A DNA stretch of 56,665 bases, the filler included, from Sluysia triapertura (lineage: Eukaryota), in the NCBI GenBank assembly GCA_046118255.1. It is 4 parts of 4 records of this genome, joined end to end, with 100 filler letters (N's around TTAATTAATTAA, not from the genome) between each part and the next. Parts side by side here need not be neighbours in the genome. Positions count along the whole stretch, not along the records: positions 1 to 11,682 come from JBJNIA010180251.1; 3 more parts are not named here. One strand, given 5' to 3'. Position 1 is the first letter of the stretch, and each line of letters opens with the position of its first letter. The notes beneath the pieces are model-generated. The model was given only the letters and a program-made list of their open reading frames with translations, was not told the origin of the DNA and did no database searches. Below, one piece after another: positions 684 through 20,954 of this stretch. The position numbers were made by a program, and so were the translations under genes.

Positions 684-943
684 AAACTAACGTCACTTTA
701 TCAGAAAGATAATCAGTCTTCTTTATAACCACTGGATGTAAATGAAATTTTTCTCAAACTGTGAATTTAAAAAACAAATTCTTGTATACGATTTTTTTTG
801 AAAATTCTCATGTGTTTTGTGTTAAAAATTAGTCTGCTTATATACTAGTTTTAGTCCGACCTTGGTCAGACTAAAACAAAAATATTAAATTAAAATAATT
901 AAACAAAAATTTTTAAAAAAAATTAAATTAGTGACGTTAGTTT
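684..943. repeat. MITE-like inverted-repeat structure with an internal hairpin
   Basis: Perfect 14-bp inverted repeat AAACTAACGTCACT (684-697) / AGTGACGTTAGTTT (930-943). Near-perfect palindrome GTTTTAGTCCGACCTTGGTCAGACTAAAAC at 848-877. Confidence 0.5.
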
Positions 944-2745: not shown

Positions 2746-4186
2746 ATGGGTAAAATATTCTATTTAGTTATTTAGTGTAATAATTAGATAGAACCAGAAG
2801 TGGAAGGGTTGTAAAAAAATCCTTTAAATTTGTAAAAATGTTATTTTGTAAATTATATTACAGGACGAAGAAAATGATGATTATGAATTAAGCTTAAGTG
2901 ATGATATTATAAGTAATAAAGATGATGACTTTAATGAAATAGCGTTTGATAAAACTGCGAAACCTACTTCAAATAAACGGAAAAGTAATTTAATACCTCG
3001 TAAAGAAGAGCAGGTAGGTGGAGTAAATCCTGTTAATAAAATTTCTTTGATGAGTATGATATCTAAAGGTGGGCAAACAATTCAAGGAGGTAATTTTGAA
3101 TTGTATTTTTATGTATTAGATATTAAACCTAATACTGTAATAAGTTCGTTTAATAAAAAGGTTGTACCTGTAAAGAAAGATCCGGCTTTTAATTTTTATT
3201 CAACTGTTAGAAAAATGCTATCGAGTTTAGAATTTGTACGTTTATTATATTAATTATGTTTTTAATAAGGAATATGTTCCATTAAAAAATCAAGTGCAAA
3301 GTTCTTTAAGTAACAGTGGACTTGTAGATATTTGCAAAGGCGGTAATTATATAGTTTATTATTGCAATTGTTTAGATACTATGAAATTTACGTTCGATCC
3401 TACTCAACATAATGTTCATGTAAGTGCAGAAAAAGCCAATGAAAAAATTAAAGAAATTGTAGGTGTGGAATTGGATTATGAAGTTAGCTTTATAATTATT
3501 ACATCGATTTTATTCAGGAATTATCAAAAGTTAATCGTATGAGTACATATTATCTTTATACAGCTGTTTCGAAAAAAAAATTAGAAGCATTCGGTCAAAG
3601 TTCTAATCAACAACAATTGAATAAAGATTTTACGAAAACTTGGTCCAAAATGCCAGAAAGAACGCGTCGTGATTGGGAAATTAAAGCAAATCGTGTGAAA
3701 CGCATTATTGAGGAGCAGAAAAGACGTGAACAGTCTGAAACCTGTGTTAATCGTGACAAAAGAGAAAATTGCATCATGGAAGCTACAAGTACTATTGAAA
3801 AAGCGAAGGTATGTTACTGTTTTATTTAATTTTTATTTTAGTTACTCGATTATAATCTTATTGATTTGTGTGGTTATTTCGGAACTATTGCAGAAGGAAT
3901 GAAGAAAATAGCTGATGATTTACATAAGCAGCCTAATGTAAGTTGTGTGTTTTATATAAATTGTTTAGTGAGGTGTTTTATGCATTTATAGATCGAATGT
4001 AAAAAATAACTAATTTATTGTTTTTAGAGTATTGTAAATGTTGAGCAAGTAGAGAGTAAACTTTTGGACTATTTGTTATCATCAGTTGTGTGTTTGATTG
4101 CATTATTTGAAGAAACAGAAGGTTTGGATCGACATATTTCAACTGGATCTCTTAATAAACTTTCTTATATTGTTCCCACAAAATGA
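2746..4186 (+). CDS. HMGXB4: HMG-box-containing protein 4 homologue, 9 exons
   Basis: ATG at 2746. GT-AG introns at 2750-2787, 2832-2863, 3090-3119, 3236-3269, 3343-3375, 3483-3517, 3809-3841 and 3938-4027 give one open frame to TGA 4184-4186. N-terminal RTRSGRVVKKS. HMG box MSTYYLY...KTWSKMPERTRRDWEIKA. C-terminus IDLCGYFGTIAEGMKKIA...SKLLDYLLSS...LNKLSYIVP resembles the HMGXB4 C-terminal domain. Confidence 0.85.
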
Positions 4187-4729: not shown

Positions 4730-6230
4730 TTATTTTAGGAATGTTATGTTTTGGTTTGTTGATTTTAAATGATAACAATTTAGTGAAGCAAAATATCTTT
4801 TAATTTTTATATAGGAATTGATAGAATTTATATTTATATTATTAAATCTAGATTCATTGTAAGTATTATGTATTAAGCTTTTATTTAAATTTATTATTAA
4901 TGAATTAATAAAATGAATTGAAAAGGCTTCGAAAGCTACAACAATTACTTTATTTTTTATTATAACAAAAAGTTTGGGTTTATTTGTCATGTCTTCGCAT
5001 ACGTTGCTACGCTTTGCCCCAGAATTAGCATCTAAAATAAAATAACAATTTAAATTATATACAAGATGAACAAAAGTAATAATTACGTTATAAGGATATT
5101 GTAAGACTTGTAATGTCCTTGCCATTATTTATTATCTCGAAACGATAAGTGGTTTGTGCAATTACTTTTATTATGCTGCAAAAAAAAACTTTCTAATATA
5201 ATAAAAACATCTGTTGTGTCGTACTTCTGTGATTTTCGCATAAATTCTGCATTAATATTATACAATTCATAAGTGATGTAATCTTCGAGTCTACAAATGC
5301 TCATACAGTAGTTTGTATAATCGTCACTAATAACATAACTATAATTAACAATTCTATTAAATTTATCTTTTTTAGACCTTTTATGGCCAAAGTTTATTTT
5401 ATATTTTAAAACATTTGGTAAATCTAAAAACTTGAGAACATCTAATAAAATTCGATCAATTAATGTAACTATAAAATCAAAATTCATATTATTAAAAAAA
5501 TGGATGAGATAACTCATTACATGATGAACAGAGTCTCTATGAACGTTTGTCTCGTCTTTTATATTTAACACAAAATAAGGTAAGTGATCATAAAACGTTT
5601 TTCTTGGCTCATTAGGAGAAAATGTAAAATAGCTAAATAAAAATGTAACATGTAGTAGAACATTATCTTGTGCTACATATTTTAAATTAAATTTACTAAG
5701 AACAGTCATCAAAATGTTACATGAAATGATGATATTCTCTTTATTACAACTGTAGCGTTTCAGAAAATCAATTGAGGTAATCATAAATTCATATTGTCTT
5801 TAAGTAATATAAAATATAATATATTTCATTAAAACGACTGATCTGGTTCTTTAAAAAATAATAAACGCTTACTATATGTATACCTTGGATCCCATGATTC
5901 TAAACTATAAATTTGAAACAAACCTTTAATCCATTCTAAAATTGGAACTATGTGACCTGAATAGCGTACGCGAAATAAATCACATCGGTCTATAGACTCA
6001 AAATTGACACGTTTCAATTTTACATATAAATTACTGATTATTAAACTAAAATCTTTGTTGTTGTCAGTTGATGCCGAAGACAACTTCATTAGGATACCAA
6101 ATGTTTGACAAATAAAATCATATAGTGTTCCACACAACTTTTTAATTTCATTTACCTTTAACTTTATTGTTATTCGATTTGATAACGAATTTTATCGGTT
6201 GTTAATGATATTTTGTACTGTATATTCATC
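4730..6230 (-). pseudogene. Orphan ORF family, copy 1 (about 500 codons, broken by frameshifts and stops)
   Basis: ORF pieces 5829-6137, 5125-5784 and 4730-5125 are colinear with 19066-20621 (shared SIDFLKRYSCNKENI, LDLPNVL, LQVLQYP). No recognisable domain. Confidence 0.7.
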
Positions 6231-6431
6231 TCAGTGTAAGGTTCGTAGTGAGGCTGTGCAGAAACAATCTTGGAATGTCTACAAAAACCGAATTACTGCC
6301 CAATTTTTTGCATTAATTTCAAACGGACGAATAAATTGCACTTTAGCATACTTCATATCAGTTTTTTGGTAGTACTAATTGTATATTATTATTTCATTGA
6401 TATAAAACTGTTTTAGTTGAATCTATTGCTG

Positions 6432-6497
6432 ATTGGTTATCCAACCAAATCATGTAAATGATGTTTATACACACGCGATTTTGGTTGGATAATCAAT
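6432..6497 (+). ncRNA. Hairpin HP1, copy 1 (pre-miRNA-sized stem-loop)
   Basis: ATTGGTTATCCAACCAAATC pairs with GATTTTGGTTGGATAATCAAT (about 20 bp, one G-U, one bulge). Homologue at 20816-20878. Confidence 0.5.
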
Positions 6498-6527
6498 ATA
6501 ATTATTACAACAGAATGATTGTGATGA

Positions 6528-6588
6528 GCCATCATCAGTACTGACAAATCTATTTACAGTAAAGAGCAATGTCAGTACTGGTGGTGGT
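6528..6588 (+). ncRNA. Hairpin HP2, copy 1 (covarying, pre-miRNA-like stem-loop)
   Basis: 19-bp stem GCCATCATCAGTACTGACA / TGTCAGTACTGGTGGTGGT with 3 G-U pairs, no mismatches and a 23-nt loop. Covaries with 20892-20954. Confidence 0.65.
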
Positions 6589-7139
6589 AGATACAATGTT
6601 TATTTTGATTAAAATTTAATGTTAATGATAATAAAAAGATAAAAATAATAATAGTAATAATAGCAACAGTATGTTATTATTATTACCATTATTACAAAAA
6701 TGCATAAATTCCTTGCAAATCTTCACAATATCTGTCTTTCTTTTCTTTATTACTTGACATATTTTAAACTGAAATAAAATAAAAAATGATATAATTGAAT
6801 TTAATAGCAACAATAATAAGATGAACAGTGTTATAGTTATTGCTGTTATTACACTGCATAAACTTTTAGATTCTTTAAAAACTGTGCACAATCTTTTATA
6901 TTTCTGAACTATTGGACTGCATTTAAATATGTTTGAAGCTAAAATTTTCAAGTACAGATTTGTTTAAATAAATTTTACATACGTAATTAACGTATGATAG
7001 CAGTTTTATGCCATACAGTGAAATGCAGAACGCTAGAATGAATTTTTAGATGGTGACTTATATTTTTGATTGAGAGTAGTATTTGAATATTGGAAGATTG
7101 TGACCATAAGATGCATTAAGTAAATGTGAAAAGATAAAT

Positions 7140-7513
7140 TATAGTACAACTCTTAGTATATTTGAAAGGTTATTGTTACTGTTATCCGTGATTTGTTTTC
7201 TTGCTATTTTTAAGCGGTATTGTATTTTGTGCTGTTAGTTATTATGGGATAATAATTGATTAATTTGAAAGGTTGTAATTGATTCGAAGAATTCGAGTGG
7301 ATAATGTAGAGTAGCATGGTTTTAATGGATCTGTTGATGTAAAGTGATGGTATTGGGTATGAATGTGGTTTGTATATTATGAGATTATGAATATACCTTA
7401 ATTTTGGCAGATGAACTGTTTAGTGAGTGAAGAGAAAATAAATATGTGAATGTTAAAGTGTTGAAAAATTAATTTTTTATAAAATTTAATAGTTGTGAAG
7501 GTTGACCACCACA
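7140..7513 (-). mobile_element. Gypsy-type 3' LTR (left boundary tentative)
   Basis: Minus strand starts TGTGGTGGTCAACC directly after a purine-rich tract and an integrase tail. Aligns with 21188-21575. Candidate end ...ACTATA at 7140. Confidence 0.7.
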
Positions 7514-7525
7514 TCAGCCCCCTCT
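7514..7525 (-). promoter_or_regulatory. Polypurine tract of an LTR retrotransposon
   Basis: Minus strand AGAGGGGGCTGA abuts the TG start of the LTR. Confidence 0.7.
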
Positions 7526-7553
7526 GAAGACGCGGAGCGATATATGTTTAATT

Positions 7554-7910
7554 TTAAAATGAGTTTGGTACCTTTAATTGAATTTTATGTAACCCTTGTT
7601 CGTTTAGCAAGGTAGCAGTGTTGTTAAATGTTACTGATTTTTTTGTTGTTGTAATTTGAGAATCTTCTTCAACTAGAATTGTTGCTGGTTTGAGCTTACA
7701 CCAGTTTACCGTTTTGGGTTTTCCATTGATATTAATTGAAGCTTTATTGTTATTTGAATTGAATTGGATGACTTGGTTGAAGAGATTTTGGATTTTCTGT
7801 TTTGAGCCACACAAATTTACTGTTTGTGATGTTTTTGGGTATGAAAATGTGAGGATTCTGGTTGCGTTGTGTTGATCTGTTTGATTCAATGTAGTATTGA
7901 TTTGTTTCAT
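7554..7910 (-). mobile_element. Degenerate gypsy integrase C-terminal tail (CsRn1-like)
   Basis: ININGKPKTVNWCKLKPATI resembles the xINGxxxTVSxxRLKPA motif of gypsy integrase tails and lies just upstream of the PPT and LTR. Confidence 0.65.
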
Positions 7911-9159
7911 GAATAGTGCAATGATTTCTTAACAGATTCTTAACAAATAATATTTTGTTATTATTTTTGTTATATTACTTACTATTTCAATGTTATTATT
8001 ATTTACTTACACTTGTAAATAATAATCTTATATTATTGAAATATTTAATTATTCTTATTATTGGTGTTACTATTTTCATCATTAATACTAATGTCCTTTT
8101 ATTATTATATAATTATTAATTAACAATTAATAAATAATAAATAATAGTCGTTATAAATAAATAAATTGCAACTTTAGTCAATATTGTTAATAAAAATGCC
8201 ACAAAATCTAGCTGTTAAATTGATTGTTAAACCTATTGAAAAAATCAAAAGTAGCTGAAAATAAATTTAAAATCTACAAAACGAAGACAATAAACAGGAT
8301 ATCATTAACGATGTTAAAAAGAATAAAGGACTCTCATTCCCAAAAATATTAATCGAAAAACAATTAGTTAAATATCGAAAAGTGTTAAATATGACAATGG
8401 TATATGTTACAATAAAATTACCGCAGAATCAATTAATGAATGTGTTGAGATCCTTAAAGTTTATGGTACCGAAATTAGAATTTCTTGACTAATTTTTGTA
8501 GATTCATTTTGTATTACAATTGTAATGAAATTTAATTTATTACTATTTATTTTGTTTTTATTAAAAAATTGATTTGCTTTGATTACTAAAATAAGAGTTG
8601 AAATACATATTTCGACAGGCCTTAAGCCGGTTTTAAACTTAGTAAAAATTTATTTTATAAGAGTGCTAGATAAGATAAAATTAGATAAAAGTGTATTCGA
8701 AATAAATATTCTTAGAAGAACCGCTGAAAAGAATTATAACTTTTCCTATAAAAACTTACTAAATTTTAAAACGAATGATGCCTAATCATTCAAGTATATA
8801 GTTAACTTCTTAATTAATAAACATCTAAAAGAACTTCTACAAAATAATGTGTAGAAGATGCAAAAAGTTATTCCAGTTTTATATCGTGCTGTAAATGCTC
8901 TTAATTTATTAGAAACTAAAAGTTCTAAGGATTTTAATGGAGACAAATACTTGACATAACCTTTGAACAGCGCAAAGATCTAATATAAAAATTATTACCA
9001 TCCTTCATGGCATAATTATTCCATCCTTCCTGAAAAAAGTTCATGTAAGTTACTCGATCCAACTTCAAAATTCCCTAAAAATAAAAAGAATAATAATAAT
9101 AAGGAATAGAACCACAATTAGTAGAGTATGATCAATAATTATTGTTTTCTGATATGTCC

Positions 9160-10200
9160 CAGTCTAAAAGCGAACCTTCTTAGTCCAGATGTGTTGGTGA
9201 GGATGGAATCAATGATGACAGGGGCGGTGTTGATGATGTTCGCCATGAGTAGTTGGCAGCTGAAGTAATTGATTGGGAGATAGCATCGTAATCTGTGAAA
9301 CTGTTGGTAAGTCCAATGGTCTTCATGCCGAGATGGTGGAGTTACTTACATTTAGAAAATGGGTAAGTGGAAGAACAGAATGGAAGGATAAAAAGGAGAA
9401 ATCATTTTCGAGAATTTAATTAAAAATAGGTACAAATTGATATGATGACCCGAAATATTAATTTCAAATATGACAAGAAAATAAATAATATTAAAAGATA
9501 ATAATAGAAAAACAATTAAATCGTGATTATTAAGACTGATTATACCTTTAATCCAACCAAAAGGAATATTAAAAATATCTATTATTAAACTTGTGTGTAA
9601 TGAGACAATAACTTTATCATGAAAATAGCCCAAAATATAATGAGGGATGTTCTCTCTATCTACCAGATCAATTTCATCCAACTCGTGAAAATCGCGAAGG
9701 AAATTCTTTATACGAGAATGGTTGCTATAGGAAAGCAAACCGATGGAATGATATAGAATGCAGTTTATTTATGAAATCTATTGCCTATTACGTGCAACTA
9801 AATGTAATTTTACCTCGTCATGGACGAAAAGAGTGAACACATATGCGACATAAATGTGTTGGGCAAGAAAGGTTGTACCTCTGCACGGACACTGGTAGAG
9901 AATTCTTGGACCTCCAATGTGAGTCTAATAATCAAAGGTACAGAGAAGAAAAAGGGAGCCGTCTACTGCTAGGATCACATTAACTGAAACCCGAGGCAGT
10001 GAGATATGCATGTCGTGATAATTTTCTAAGATATTGTCCAAACATTTCACAAATATTCTGGTATATTGAGAAGACAGGATCAAGAGGTGAGTGGCTACAT
10101 CAATGTCGAACTCACTTTTAATTTAGTTATGAGTACCTAAAGAGTGAATAAAGAAAACAGGAGTGTCACAGGAAGTAGAAAAGGTTTTAATTTGCTCCAA
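9160..10200 (-). mobile_element. Possible decayed gypsy gag/protease remnant
   Basis: Higher GC than the flanks. Fragments IKNFLRDFHELDE and FSTSVRAEVQPFL, and a broken CxYHxxxG-like motif near 9350. Same strand as, and upstream of, the integrase tail. Confidence 0.3.
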
Positions 10201-10341
10201 AATTTATGATAACAAAGCAAATATGACAAAAAAAATTAAATCTATGAATAAATGTGTACAATAAAATTCATAAATTGTTTCTTATATTTATAATGATGTT
10301 ATTATGTATTTTTGTATGTTAAGAAACTCACCACTTATTTC

Positions 10342-10490
10342 TGTGGTGGCTCAAACCATTACCCATGATTTCACTGCATCAGAAACATATGTCAAAGTAC
10401 ACAACACCTACTAAACTTATCTAAAACTTTTACTCATCTAAGAACACATTTACACATACTACATCTCACTGTTTCCACTCCAATATAAAT
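10342..10490 (+). mobile_element. LTR-like fragment
   Basis: Starts TGTGGTGGCTC and continues with the same A/C-rich composition as the LTRs at 7513 and 22759. Right end not defined. Confidence 0.3.
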
Positions 10491-11085: not shown

Positions 11086-11151
11086 TTAAATGGACTGACC
11101 GAGGATCGAACCTGGGACCATCGCTGCACAGTTCGATTGCTCTACCACTGA
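11086..11151 (-). mobile_element. Family A fragment (tRNA-like core)
   Basis: Minus strand TCAGTGGTAGAGCAATCGAACTGTGCAGCGATGGTCCCAGGTTCGATCCTCGGTCAGTCCA has a partial A box and a B box. The 5' acceptor arm is missing. Confidence 0.75.
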
Positions 11152-20891: not shown

Positions 20892-20954
20892 GCAACTATC
20901 AATGGTGATGAAAATTTGTGCGTAGTAAGTAGTGGTGTCTCCATTGATAGTGGT
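20892..20954 (+). ncRNA. Hairpin HP2, copy 2
   Basis: 19-position stem GCAACTATCAATGGTGATG / TGTCTCCATTGATAGTGGT with 3 G-U pairs, 2 mismatches and a 25-nt loop. Four compensatory changes versus copy 1. Confidence 0.65.

What the first reader, a model, noticed from the sequence alone, without database searches (positions are those of the whole stretch)
6528..6588. Covarying pre-miRNA-sized hairpin (HP2) conserved in structure between two diverged cassette copies
Seen: the 19-bp stems at 6528-6588 and 20892-20954 align without gaps. Four pairs show double compensatory changes (stem position 6 C-G/T-A, 11 G-C/A-T, 13 A-T/G-C, 14 C-G/G-C). Four more changes keep pairing through G-U (positions 5, 8, 18, 19). 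Only 2 of 19 pairs are broken in copy 2 and none in copy 1. There are six G-T pairs and no A-C pairs on the + strand. Inference: a + strand RNA structure under selection, antisense to the LTR and ORF, with miRNA-precursor dimensions (61-63 nt) but a diverging stem sequence. I do not recognise a known miRNA in either arm.
Basis: partly seen in the sequence, partly recalled or inferred. Interest (0 to 1): 0.85.

Follow-up and report, generated by a model that had tools for sequence, protein, structure and literature searches.

The report
Two adjacent stable hairpins, function unproven
The 61-base hairpin is real and far stronger than chance, and it sits beside a second strong hairpin in a gene spacer of an unidentified AT-rich eukaryote, but the claimed covariation could not be checked and nothing shows it makes a microRNA.

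Summary
Confirmed: 6528-6588 folds into a 19-pair uninterrupted stem (3 G:U) with a 23-nt loop. On the + strand it gives -30.9 kcal/mol (z -7.2); on the - strand -23.1. A second hairpin (HP1, 6432-6497) lies 30 nt upstream. These two are the only folds in the 11.7-kb piece that beat every shuffled control.

Not checkable: the second copy (20892-20954) is outside my piece, and no related locus turned up in any collection. The covariation claim is therefore untested.

Not supported: the "LTR and ORF" context. The piece has no long direct repeats and no retroelement domains. The neighbouring 224-aa ORF matched nothing among 1.84 billion protein representatives.

New observations:
- HP2 is palindromic right to its centre, which an RNA hairpin cannot use. 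That points to an origin as a DNA inverted duplication.
- Wobble pairs occur only in the outer stem and only favour the + strand (HP2 3:0, HP1 1:0). This is suggestive but not significant.
- The basal stem extension is no better than random flanks give.
- Rfam gives only generic sub-threshold hairpin hits.

Best reading (about 0.35): a young, palindrome-derived + strand hairpin-RNA locus. A nearly equal rival is DNA-level palindromic elements with no RNA function.

The parts
6528..6546 (+). HP2 5' arm (19 nt). Contains the 10-bp self-complementary motif TCAGTACTGA at 6535-6544.
6547..6569 (+). HP2 loop (23 nt). It is itself partly palindromic about base 6558: 7 of 11 mirrored positions are Watson-Crick, including 5 that abut the 1-nt centre.
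6570..6588 (+). HP2 3' arm (19 nt). Contains a second copy of the 10-bp motif with one change, at 6572-6581.
6513..6602 (+). Possible extended HP2 stem: about 11 further pairs with small internal loops, total -36.7 kcal/mol. The gain is not better than random genomic flanks give.
6432..6497 (+). HP1, the neighbouring hairpin. Arms are 6432-6451 and 6477-6497: 20 pairs with one G:U and one bulged base, around a loop of about 25-30 nt. RNA MFE is -25.7 on the + strand and -22.7 on the - strand.
6498..6527 (+). 30-nt spacer between HP1 and HP2. In the 221-nt fold it forms a small AU-rich hairpin of its own.

Best explanation
HP2, together with HP1 thirty bases upstream, is a two-hairpin module that began as short DNA inverted duplications (palindromes). 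It is most likely expressed from the + strand as a structured hairpin RNA: a young, lineage-specific small-RNA precursor of the miRNA or short-hairpin siRNA kind.

Shown:
- Both hairpins exist and are the only folds in the piece beyond chance.
- They are adjacent.
- Every non-Watson-Crick pair in their stems is a G:U on the + strand.
- HP2 is palindromic to its centre.

Inferred:
- Transcription of the + strand.
- Processing into small RNAs.
- Selection on the structure.

The hairpins lie in a spacer of about 430 nt. It is bounded by a credible - strand ORF group (4733-6191) and a low-complexity ORF (6625-6963) that shows no coding signature. A + strand transcript would therefore run divergently from the - strand gene. 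A TATAAAA at 6401-6407 and an AATAAA at 6630-6635 on the + strand fit a compact transcription unit, but both motifs are common by chance in DNA of 26% G+C.
For: - HP2 as RNA: -30.9 kcal/mol, z -7.2. HP1: -25.7, z -4.9.
- They are the two best 70-nt folds on either strand. Both lie beyond the minima of 12 shuffled windows, -18.6 to -22.2.
- Start-to-start spacing is 96 nt, as in hairpin clusters.
- The + strand is favoured in both: HP2 -30.9 against -23.1 and HP1 -25.7 against -22.7. For the whole 221-nt region it is -69.8 against -53.5.
- Wobble pairs are confined to the outer 19-pair stem, while the four non-wobble mismatches all lie in the inner part. Fisher P is 0.029. This is as expected if pairing of the outer stem is kept in a + strand RNA.
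- Nine unchanged pairs out of 19 would be unlikely for two unrelated hairpins: 4.5 expected, P 0.02.
Against: - There is no second sequence, so covariation is untested.
- The strand asymmetry is 4:0 only (two-sided P 0.125). It can also be explained by C-to-T changes on one DNA strand.
- A perfect 19-pair stem without bulges, and a palindrome that continues to a 1-nt centre, are typical of DNA inverted repeats rather than established miRNA genes.
- The basal extension needed by a Microprocessor-type enzyme is not above chance.
- No Rfam family reaches threshold.
- The third palindrome nearby (6646-6694) favours the - strand.
- No expression data are available.
- The organism is unidentified, so its small-RNA machinery is unknown.
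Confidence: 0.35

Rival explanations
1. DNA-level palindromic elements with no RNA function. HP1 and HP2 would be short inverted duplications, or MITE/foldback-like insertions, in an intergenic spacer. The arms stay complementary through DNA processes such as intrastrand template switching (quasipalindrome correction) or recent origin. Apparent compensatory changes between copies then arise without any selection on an RNA.
For: - HP2 is symmetric about base 6558 through its whole length. Its 29-nt arms are 79% complementary with 1 nt between them.
- Seven of 11 inner positions are Watson-Crick (P 0.025), including 5 next to the centre that no RNA hairpin could use.
- The stem has no bulges.
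- Each arm carries the same 10-bp self-complementary motif, a palindrome within a palindrome.
- The hairpin is also strongly stable as single-stranded DNA on both strands.
- Other, weaker palindromes occur in the piece at 840-885 and 6646-6694.
- From general knowledge: short perfect inverted repeats in eukaryotic genomes far outnumber true miRNA genes.
Against: - No target-site duplication is visible at either hairpin (read).
- No other copy of either arm occurs in 11.7 kb.
- All four stem mismatches are G:T on the same strand.
- Non-wobble mismatches are excluded from the outer stem.
If true, that argues for an RNA-level constraint.
Confidence: 0.33
2. Hairpins that act on neighbouring genes: 3'-end or termination signals, or a barrier between two genes. 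This resembles the palindromes that mark polyadenylation sites in AT-rich giant viruses. Each hairpin would serve a transcript that ends in the spacer.
For: - The hairpins sit in a spacer between ORFs. A + strand ORF ends at 6372, 60 nt before HP1, and a - strand ORF ends at 6622, 34 nt before HP2.
- An AATAAA lies on the - strand just upstream of HP2 (read).
- Both hairpins remain stable on the - strand.
Against: - The two flanking ORFs are weak. The - strand ORF 6625-6963 has no coding signature (GC1 0.20, G1 0.10) and is low-complexity. The + strand ORF is short.
- No other ORF end in the piece carries such a hairpin.
- The spliced HMG-box-like gene shows this is a cellular eukaryote with spliceosomal introns, where such a rule is not known (own knowledge).
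- The - strand versions carry A:C mismatches.
Confidence: 0.1
3. Double-stranded DNA binding sites. The repeated 10-bp self-complementary motif and the inverted repeats would be recognition sites for dimeric DNA-binding proteins in the promoter region of the - strand gene that starts at or below 6191.
For: - TCAGTACTGA occurs twice, 37 nt apart, and nowhere else in the piece. 0.26 matches are expected and 5 of 200 shuffles reach two.
- The location is 240-400 nt upstream of the nearest credible - strand ORF.
Against: - Complementarity extends well beyond the motif, across all 19 pairs.
- HP1 has no such motif.
Confidence: 0.07
4. Chance hairpin in AT-rich DNA, with 'covariation' produced by comparing two unrelated hairpins. 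Any two hairpins differ by seemingly compensatory changes.
For:
- Differences between any two hairpins look compensatory by construction.
Against: - The hairpin itself is far beyond chance, and so is its neighbour.
Confidence: 0.05

Closest known systems
Clustered miRNA precursors / young hairpin-RNA loci born from inverted duplications
   Same: - Two hairpins of 61-66 nt lie 96 nt apart, start to start.
- The stems could hold a small-RNA duplex of about 19-22 nt.
- Wobble pairs occur only on one strand.
- Near-perfect stems and an inverted-duplication origin are what is described for evolutionarily young hairpin loci (own knowledge).
   Different: - No family match. The best Rfam hits are generic hairpin alignments at 22-23 bits against thresholds of 65-70.
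- The stem has no bulges.
- The basal stem is not above chance.
- No expression evidence exists, and no conservation could be shown.
MITE / foldback-type short palindromic repeats
   Same: - Short terminal inverted repeats of about 19-20 bp around a small unique centre.
- Intergenic location.
- Symmetry at the DNA level right to the centre.
   Different: - No target-site duplication was seen.
- No further copy occurs in the piece.
- The genome was not available for a copy count.
- Stem mismatches are strand-biased.
Quasipalindromes maintained by template switching during replication
   Same: An imperfect palindrome whose arms stay complementary. Such correction produces paired ('compensatory') changes with no RNA involved (own knowledge).
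   Different: This mechanism predicts no preference between G:T and A:C on a given strand. Here the count is 3:0, or 4:0 with HP1, which is too few to decide.
H/ACA box snoRNA (hairpin-hinge-hairpin-tail)
   Same: Two hairpins joined by a 30-nt hinge holding ANANNA-type strings, with an ACA shortly after the second hairpin (read).
   Different: - Both stems are uninterrupted, so there is no internal pseudouridylation pocket.
- The distance from the only internal loop to the ACA is about 30 nt, not the canonical 14-16 (own knowledge).
- No Rfam snoRNA hit reaches threshold.
'Hairpin rule' palindromes at mRNA 3' ends of AT-rich giant viruses
   Same: Strong palindromes in short AT-rich spacers after ORF ends, among ORFs without homologues.
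   Different: - The piece has low ORF density and a gene with four spliceosomal introns, so it is cellular eukaryotic DNA.
- Only this one spacer carries such hairpins.

Membership tests
miRNA precursor (animal-type criteria) | Hairpin whose two arms give at least 16 complementary positions within a duplex of about 20-26 nt | tested here: met
   19 consecutive pairs, 16 Watson-Crick plus 3 G:U
miRNA precursor (animal-type criteria) | Total stem of about three helical turns, including a basal stem of about 11 bp below the cleavage site | tested here: inconclusive
   With flanks the stem extends to about 6513-6602 at -36.7 kcal/mol. The -5.8 kcal/mol gain is matched by 18% of random genomic flanks.
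miRNA precursor (animal-type criteria) | Membership of a described miRNA family by sequence and structure | tested here: not met
   Rfam 15 gives no hit at E<=1 over the piece. A local scan gives only MIR172 at 22.7 bits against 70 and MIR827 at 23.3 against 65, plus similar hits.
miRNA precursor (animal-type criteria) | Small-RNA reads from both arms with 2-nt 3' offsets and a homogeneous 5' end | not testable with these tools
   No expression data are available and the organism is not identified.
Structured RNA under selection | Significant covariation across homologous sequences | not testable with these tools
   The second copy is outside the piece. Scans of viral, metagenome and prokaryote genome collections gave no homologue.
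   The piece has no direct repeat above about 44 nt at 70% identity. A sensitive self-BLAST finds only short palindromes and low-complexity matches.
   Pfam finds no such domain in any of the 19 ORFs or stop-free segments scanned, at E<=1. The 224-aa segment has 0 hits among 1.84 billion representatives.
MITE / foldback element | Terminal inverted repeats flanked by a target-site duplication | tested here: not met
   Inverted repeats are present, but the bases flanking HP1 and HP2 show no duplication (read).
MITE / foldback element | Many dispersed copies in the genome | not testable with these tools
   Only 11.7 kb of the genome is held, and it contains no second copy.
H/ACA snoRNA | Two hairpins each with an internal pocket, an H box in the hinge, and an ACA 3 nt from the 3' end with 14-16 nt spacing to the pocket | tested here: not met
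   The stems are uninterrupted, the spacing is about 30 nt (read), and no Rfam hit was found.

The most novel reading that the evidence does not exclude
A lineage-specific, two-hairpin small-RNA gene in a poorly sampled AT-rich eukaryote with 33-35-nt introns. It would have been born from DNA palindromes and be kept by selection on RNA pairing, while its stem sequence drifts between paralogous copies. That would be a snapshot of how new miRNA-like genes arise and are maintained.
Probability: 0.2. Interest if true: 0.55.

Novelty: new member of a known kind. Interest (0 to 1): 0.3.

Why it matters
If the covariation and + strand expression were confirmed, this would be a clean example of a hairpin-RNA gene caught between its DNA-palindrome origin and RNA-level maintenance, in an organism whose proteins have no relatives in very large databases. 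If it is only a pair of DNA palindromes, it is ordinary. It would then stand as a caution that two-sequence "compensatory changes" in inverted repeats do not by themselves prove an RNA structure.

Tried and rejected
1. Finding further copies.
- A core-stem pattern scan of viral contigs gave 0 hits.
- The same scan of metagenome contigs gave 50 loci. None shares the flanks, the loop or any other part of the window. They are tandem CAGTACTGA-type repeats or other elements. One example is a four-locus family in sample Ga0307518 whose flank looks like AT-rich repeat DNA.
- A 32-nt exact pattern in prokaryote genomes gave 0 hits.
- An HP1 pattern in viral contigs gave 0 hits.

2. Identifying the organism through proteins.
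- The 219/224-aa ORF gave nothing in the word-indexed search.
- It gave nothing in the exhaustive HMMER search.
- It gave nothing in the exact look-ups.
- HMG-box exon C and exon A gave nothing.
- PDB gave only marginal hits: DCN1-like at E 0.07 for the ORF and the SSRP1 HMG box at E 0.015 for exon C.

3. Alternative genetic codes. A ciliate-type code was rejected: the HMG-box-like exons are open in the standard code and use CAA for Gln. A mitochondrial origin was rejected: there are no tRNAs and no longer ORFs under code 4.

4. Literature string search for the arm sequences found only chance primer and transcript matches.

5. A possible paralogy between two - strand ORFs sharing 'WIKG' was not significant.

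6. Bacterial-type promoter and terminator scans were uninformative.

Full report
**What was checked**

The piece is 11,682 bases with no N, 25.8% G+C and a CpG observed/expected ratio of 0.96. At 6528-6588 the + strand folds into one hairpin. Bases 6528-6546 pair with 6570-6588 as 19 consecutive pairs: 16 Watson-Crick and 3 G:U, the wobbles at stem positions 1, 5 and 8. The loop is 23 nt.

**Is it more than chance?**

Yes, clearly.
- As RNA the + strand gives -30.9 kcal/mol against -11.0 +/- 2.75 for shuffles, z -7.2.
- The - strand gives -23.1, z -5.0.
- In a 70-nt sliding scan of both strands the window mean is -6.6 with sd 3.7. The hairpin is the best fold at -31.9.
- Twelve dinucleotide-shuffled versions of the whole piece gave minima of only -18.6 to -22.2.

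The second-best fold is a different hairpin just upstream, HP1. Its arms are 6432-6451 and 6477-6497: 20 pairs with one G:U and one bulge. It gives -25.7 on the + strand and -22.7 on the - strand. Every other fold in the piece falls within the shuffled range. So the two significant hairpins in 11.7 kb lie 30 nt apart. That adjacency is itself unlikely to be an accident.

**What could not be checked**

The second copy (20892-20954) is outside the piece I was given, so the covariation claim is untested.

I looked for other copies and found none.
- The piece holds no other copy of either arm, even with 3 mismatches.
- A core-stem pattern found nothing in viral contigs.
- The same pattern found 50 loci in metagenome contigs. 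None shares flanks, loop or any other similarity with the window. They are chance matches or unrelated repeats built on the same short self-complementary motif.
- A 32-nt exact pattern found nothing in the prokaryote genome collection.

One logical point bears on the claim. Any two hairpins compared without gaps differ by apparently compensatory changes. Such changes therefore count as evidence only if homology is established from the flanks.

The copies may well be homologous, but I cannot show it.

**Context**

- There are no long direct repeats.
- No retroelement domain, and no other significant domain, occurs in the 19 ORFs and stop-free segments scanned.
- The largest - strand segment (5128-5799, 224 aa) has no homologue among 1.84 billion protein representatives.
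- It also has none in the word-indexed search and is not on record anywhere.

The one clearly recognisable gene is on the + strand. Its exons are 2864-3235, 3270-3482, 3518-3808 and 3842-3937. They are separated by GT-AG introns of 34, 35, 33 and 54 nt, all in phase 0 (read).
- The exons show a strong coding signature: GC1 of 0.40-0.47 against GC3 of 0.15-0.24.
- Exon C carries a weak HMG-box likeness: Pfam E 0.002 and the SSRP1 HMG box at E 0.015.

I searched the exons separately by reference and left out the joined-exon step.

The source is therefore a cellular eukaryote with very short introns and the standard genetic code. I could not identify it.

The hairpins lie in a spacer of about 430 nt.
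- On one side is the credible - strand ORF group 4733-6191. An ORF of 224 codons is far too long for chance in this composition.
- On the other side is a low-complexity - strand ORF (6625-6963) with no coding signature.

**Anatomy that bears on mechanism**

1. HP2 is palindromic through its whole length about base 6558. Its 29-nt arms are 79% complementary with 1 nt between them. In the 11 inner positions, 7 are Watson-Crick (P 0.025). Five of these abut the 1-nt centre. An RNA hairpin cannot close on a 1-nt loop. This symmetry therefore records an origin as a DNA inverted duplication, not selection on RNA.
2. Each arm contains the same 10-bp self-complementary motif, found nowhere else in the piece.
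3. The mismatches are sorted. The outer 19 positions have only wobble mismatches (3) and the inner 11 only non-wobble ones (4). Fisher P is 0.029. That pattern fits preservation of pairing in the outer stem of a + strand RNA. It also fits the known instability of palindrome centres (own knowledge).
4. Strand bias is weak. G:T versus A:C on the + strand is 3:0 in HP2 and 1:0 in HP1, two-sided P 0.125. All four could be C-to-T changes on the + strand. The AT-rich palindrome at 6646-6694 has mixed mismatches and favours the - strand.
5. With flanks, the HP2 stem extends by about 11 pairs with small internal loops, to 6513-6602 at -36.7 kcal/mol. That would give Drosha-type geometry. But 18% of random genomic flanks give as large a gain, so it is not evidence.
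6. Rfam gives nothing at E<=1 over the piece. A local scan gives only generic miRNA-hairpin alignments far below threshold: MIR172 at 22.7 against 70 and MIR827 at 23.3 against 65.
7. As single-stranded DNA both strands also form the hairpin, at -16.1 and -11.9 kcal/mol.

**Weighing**

For an RNA-level role on the + strand:
- the adjacency of two exceptional hairpins;
- the one-strand wobble pattern in both;
- the sorting of mismatch types;

For a purely DNA-level explanation:
- the centre-to-end palindromy;
- the bulge-free stem;
- the palindrome-within-palindrome motif;
- the high prior for short inverted repeats being repeat-derived.

I put a young, palindrome-derived + strand hairpin-RNA locus (miRNA-like or short-hairpin siRNA) first at about 0.35. 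DNA-level palindromic elements with no RNA role follow at about 0.33. The lesser rivals are 3'-end or barrier hairpins for neighbouring genes (0.10), protein-binding sites in a promoter (0.07) and chance or unrelated hairpins (0.05).

Membership in a known miRNA family is rejected. Membership in the class "miRNA precursor" is open.

**Comparison with known systems and novelty**

Functionally the closest models are clustered miRNA precursors and young hairpin loci born from inverted duplications. Structurally the closest are MITE/foldback palindromes and quasipalindromes kept by template switching. An H/ACA snoRNA architecture was considered and fails on geometry. At best this is a new member of a known kind.

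Where such a motif supports a statement, that statement is marked as own knowledge.

Noticed in passing
window 6432-6497: A second strong hairpin (HP1) lies 30 nt upstream of the finding. It has 20 pairs with one G:U and one bulge, and gives -25.7 kcal/mol on the + strand. It is the only other fold in the piece beyond the shuffled controls.
   Followed up: yes
window 2864-3937 (+): A spliced gene with exons 2864-3235, 3270-3482, 3518-3808 and 3842-3937, and phase-0 GT-AG introns of 34, 35, 33 and 54 nt. Exon C has a weak HMG-box likeness. No homologue was found for exons A or C. The first and last exons were not defined.
   Followed up: partly
window 4733-6191 (-): Three adjoining stop-free segments of 120, 224 and 132 aa on the - strand. 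The first two can be joined in frame by an 86-nt GT-AG intron (5798-5883). The 224-aa segment has no relative among 1.84 billion protein representatives, and only marginal PDB hits (DCN1-like, E 0.07).
   Followed up: partly
window 6535-6544 and 6572-6581: The 10-bp self-complementary motif TCAGTACTGA sits in each arm of HP2 (the second copy has one change) and occurs nowhere else in the piece. It is a palindrome inside the palindrome.
   Followed up: partly
window 6646-6694: An AT-rich near-perfect palindrome with 23-nt arms, 87% complementary, and a 3-nt spacer, inside an (AAT)n-like low-complexity stretch. It is more stable on the - strand (-19.6 against -14.6) and lies within the range of the shuffled controls.
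   Followed up: partly
window 11090-11150 (-), and 1224-1256: A tRNA-like fragment with A-box-like and B-box-like strings on the - strand, not called by ARAGORN. A degenerate 33-nt match to it lies at 1224-1256. It may be a tRNA pseudogene or the head of a tRNA-derived SINE.
   Followed up: no
window 840-885 and 2756-2792: Two further short palindromes or hairpins, at about -20 kcal/mol in 70-nt windows. Both are within what shuffled sequence gives.
   Followed up: partly
window 7001-8000: A strong excess of G over C (GC skew up to +0.59) and of T over A on the + strand, unlike the rest of the piece. The cause is unknown.
   Followed up: no
window 8305-10350 (-): A stretch of 682 codons without TGA on the - strand, where about 10 would be expected. 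Its composition is Leu/Ile/Phe-rich and not protein-like, and the standard code fits the one clear gene. It is probably a compositional effect.
   Followed up: partly
L004, L009, L042, L044 (metagenome sample Ga0307518): An unrelated repeated hairpin family that shares only the 11-nt core of the HP2 stem. In L004 it is embedded in very AT-rich repeat-like DNA.
   Followed up: partly
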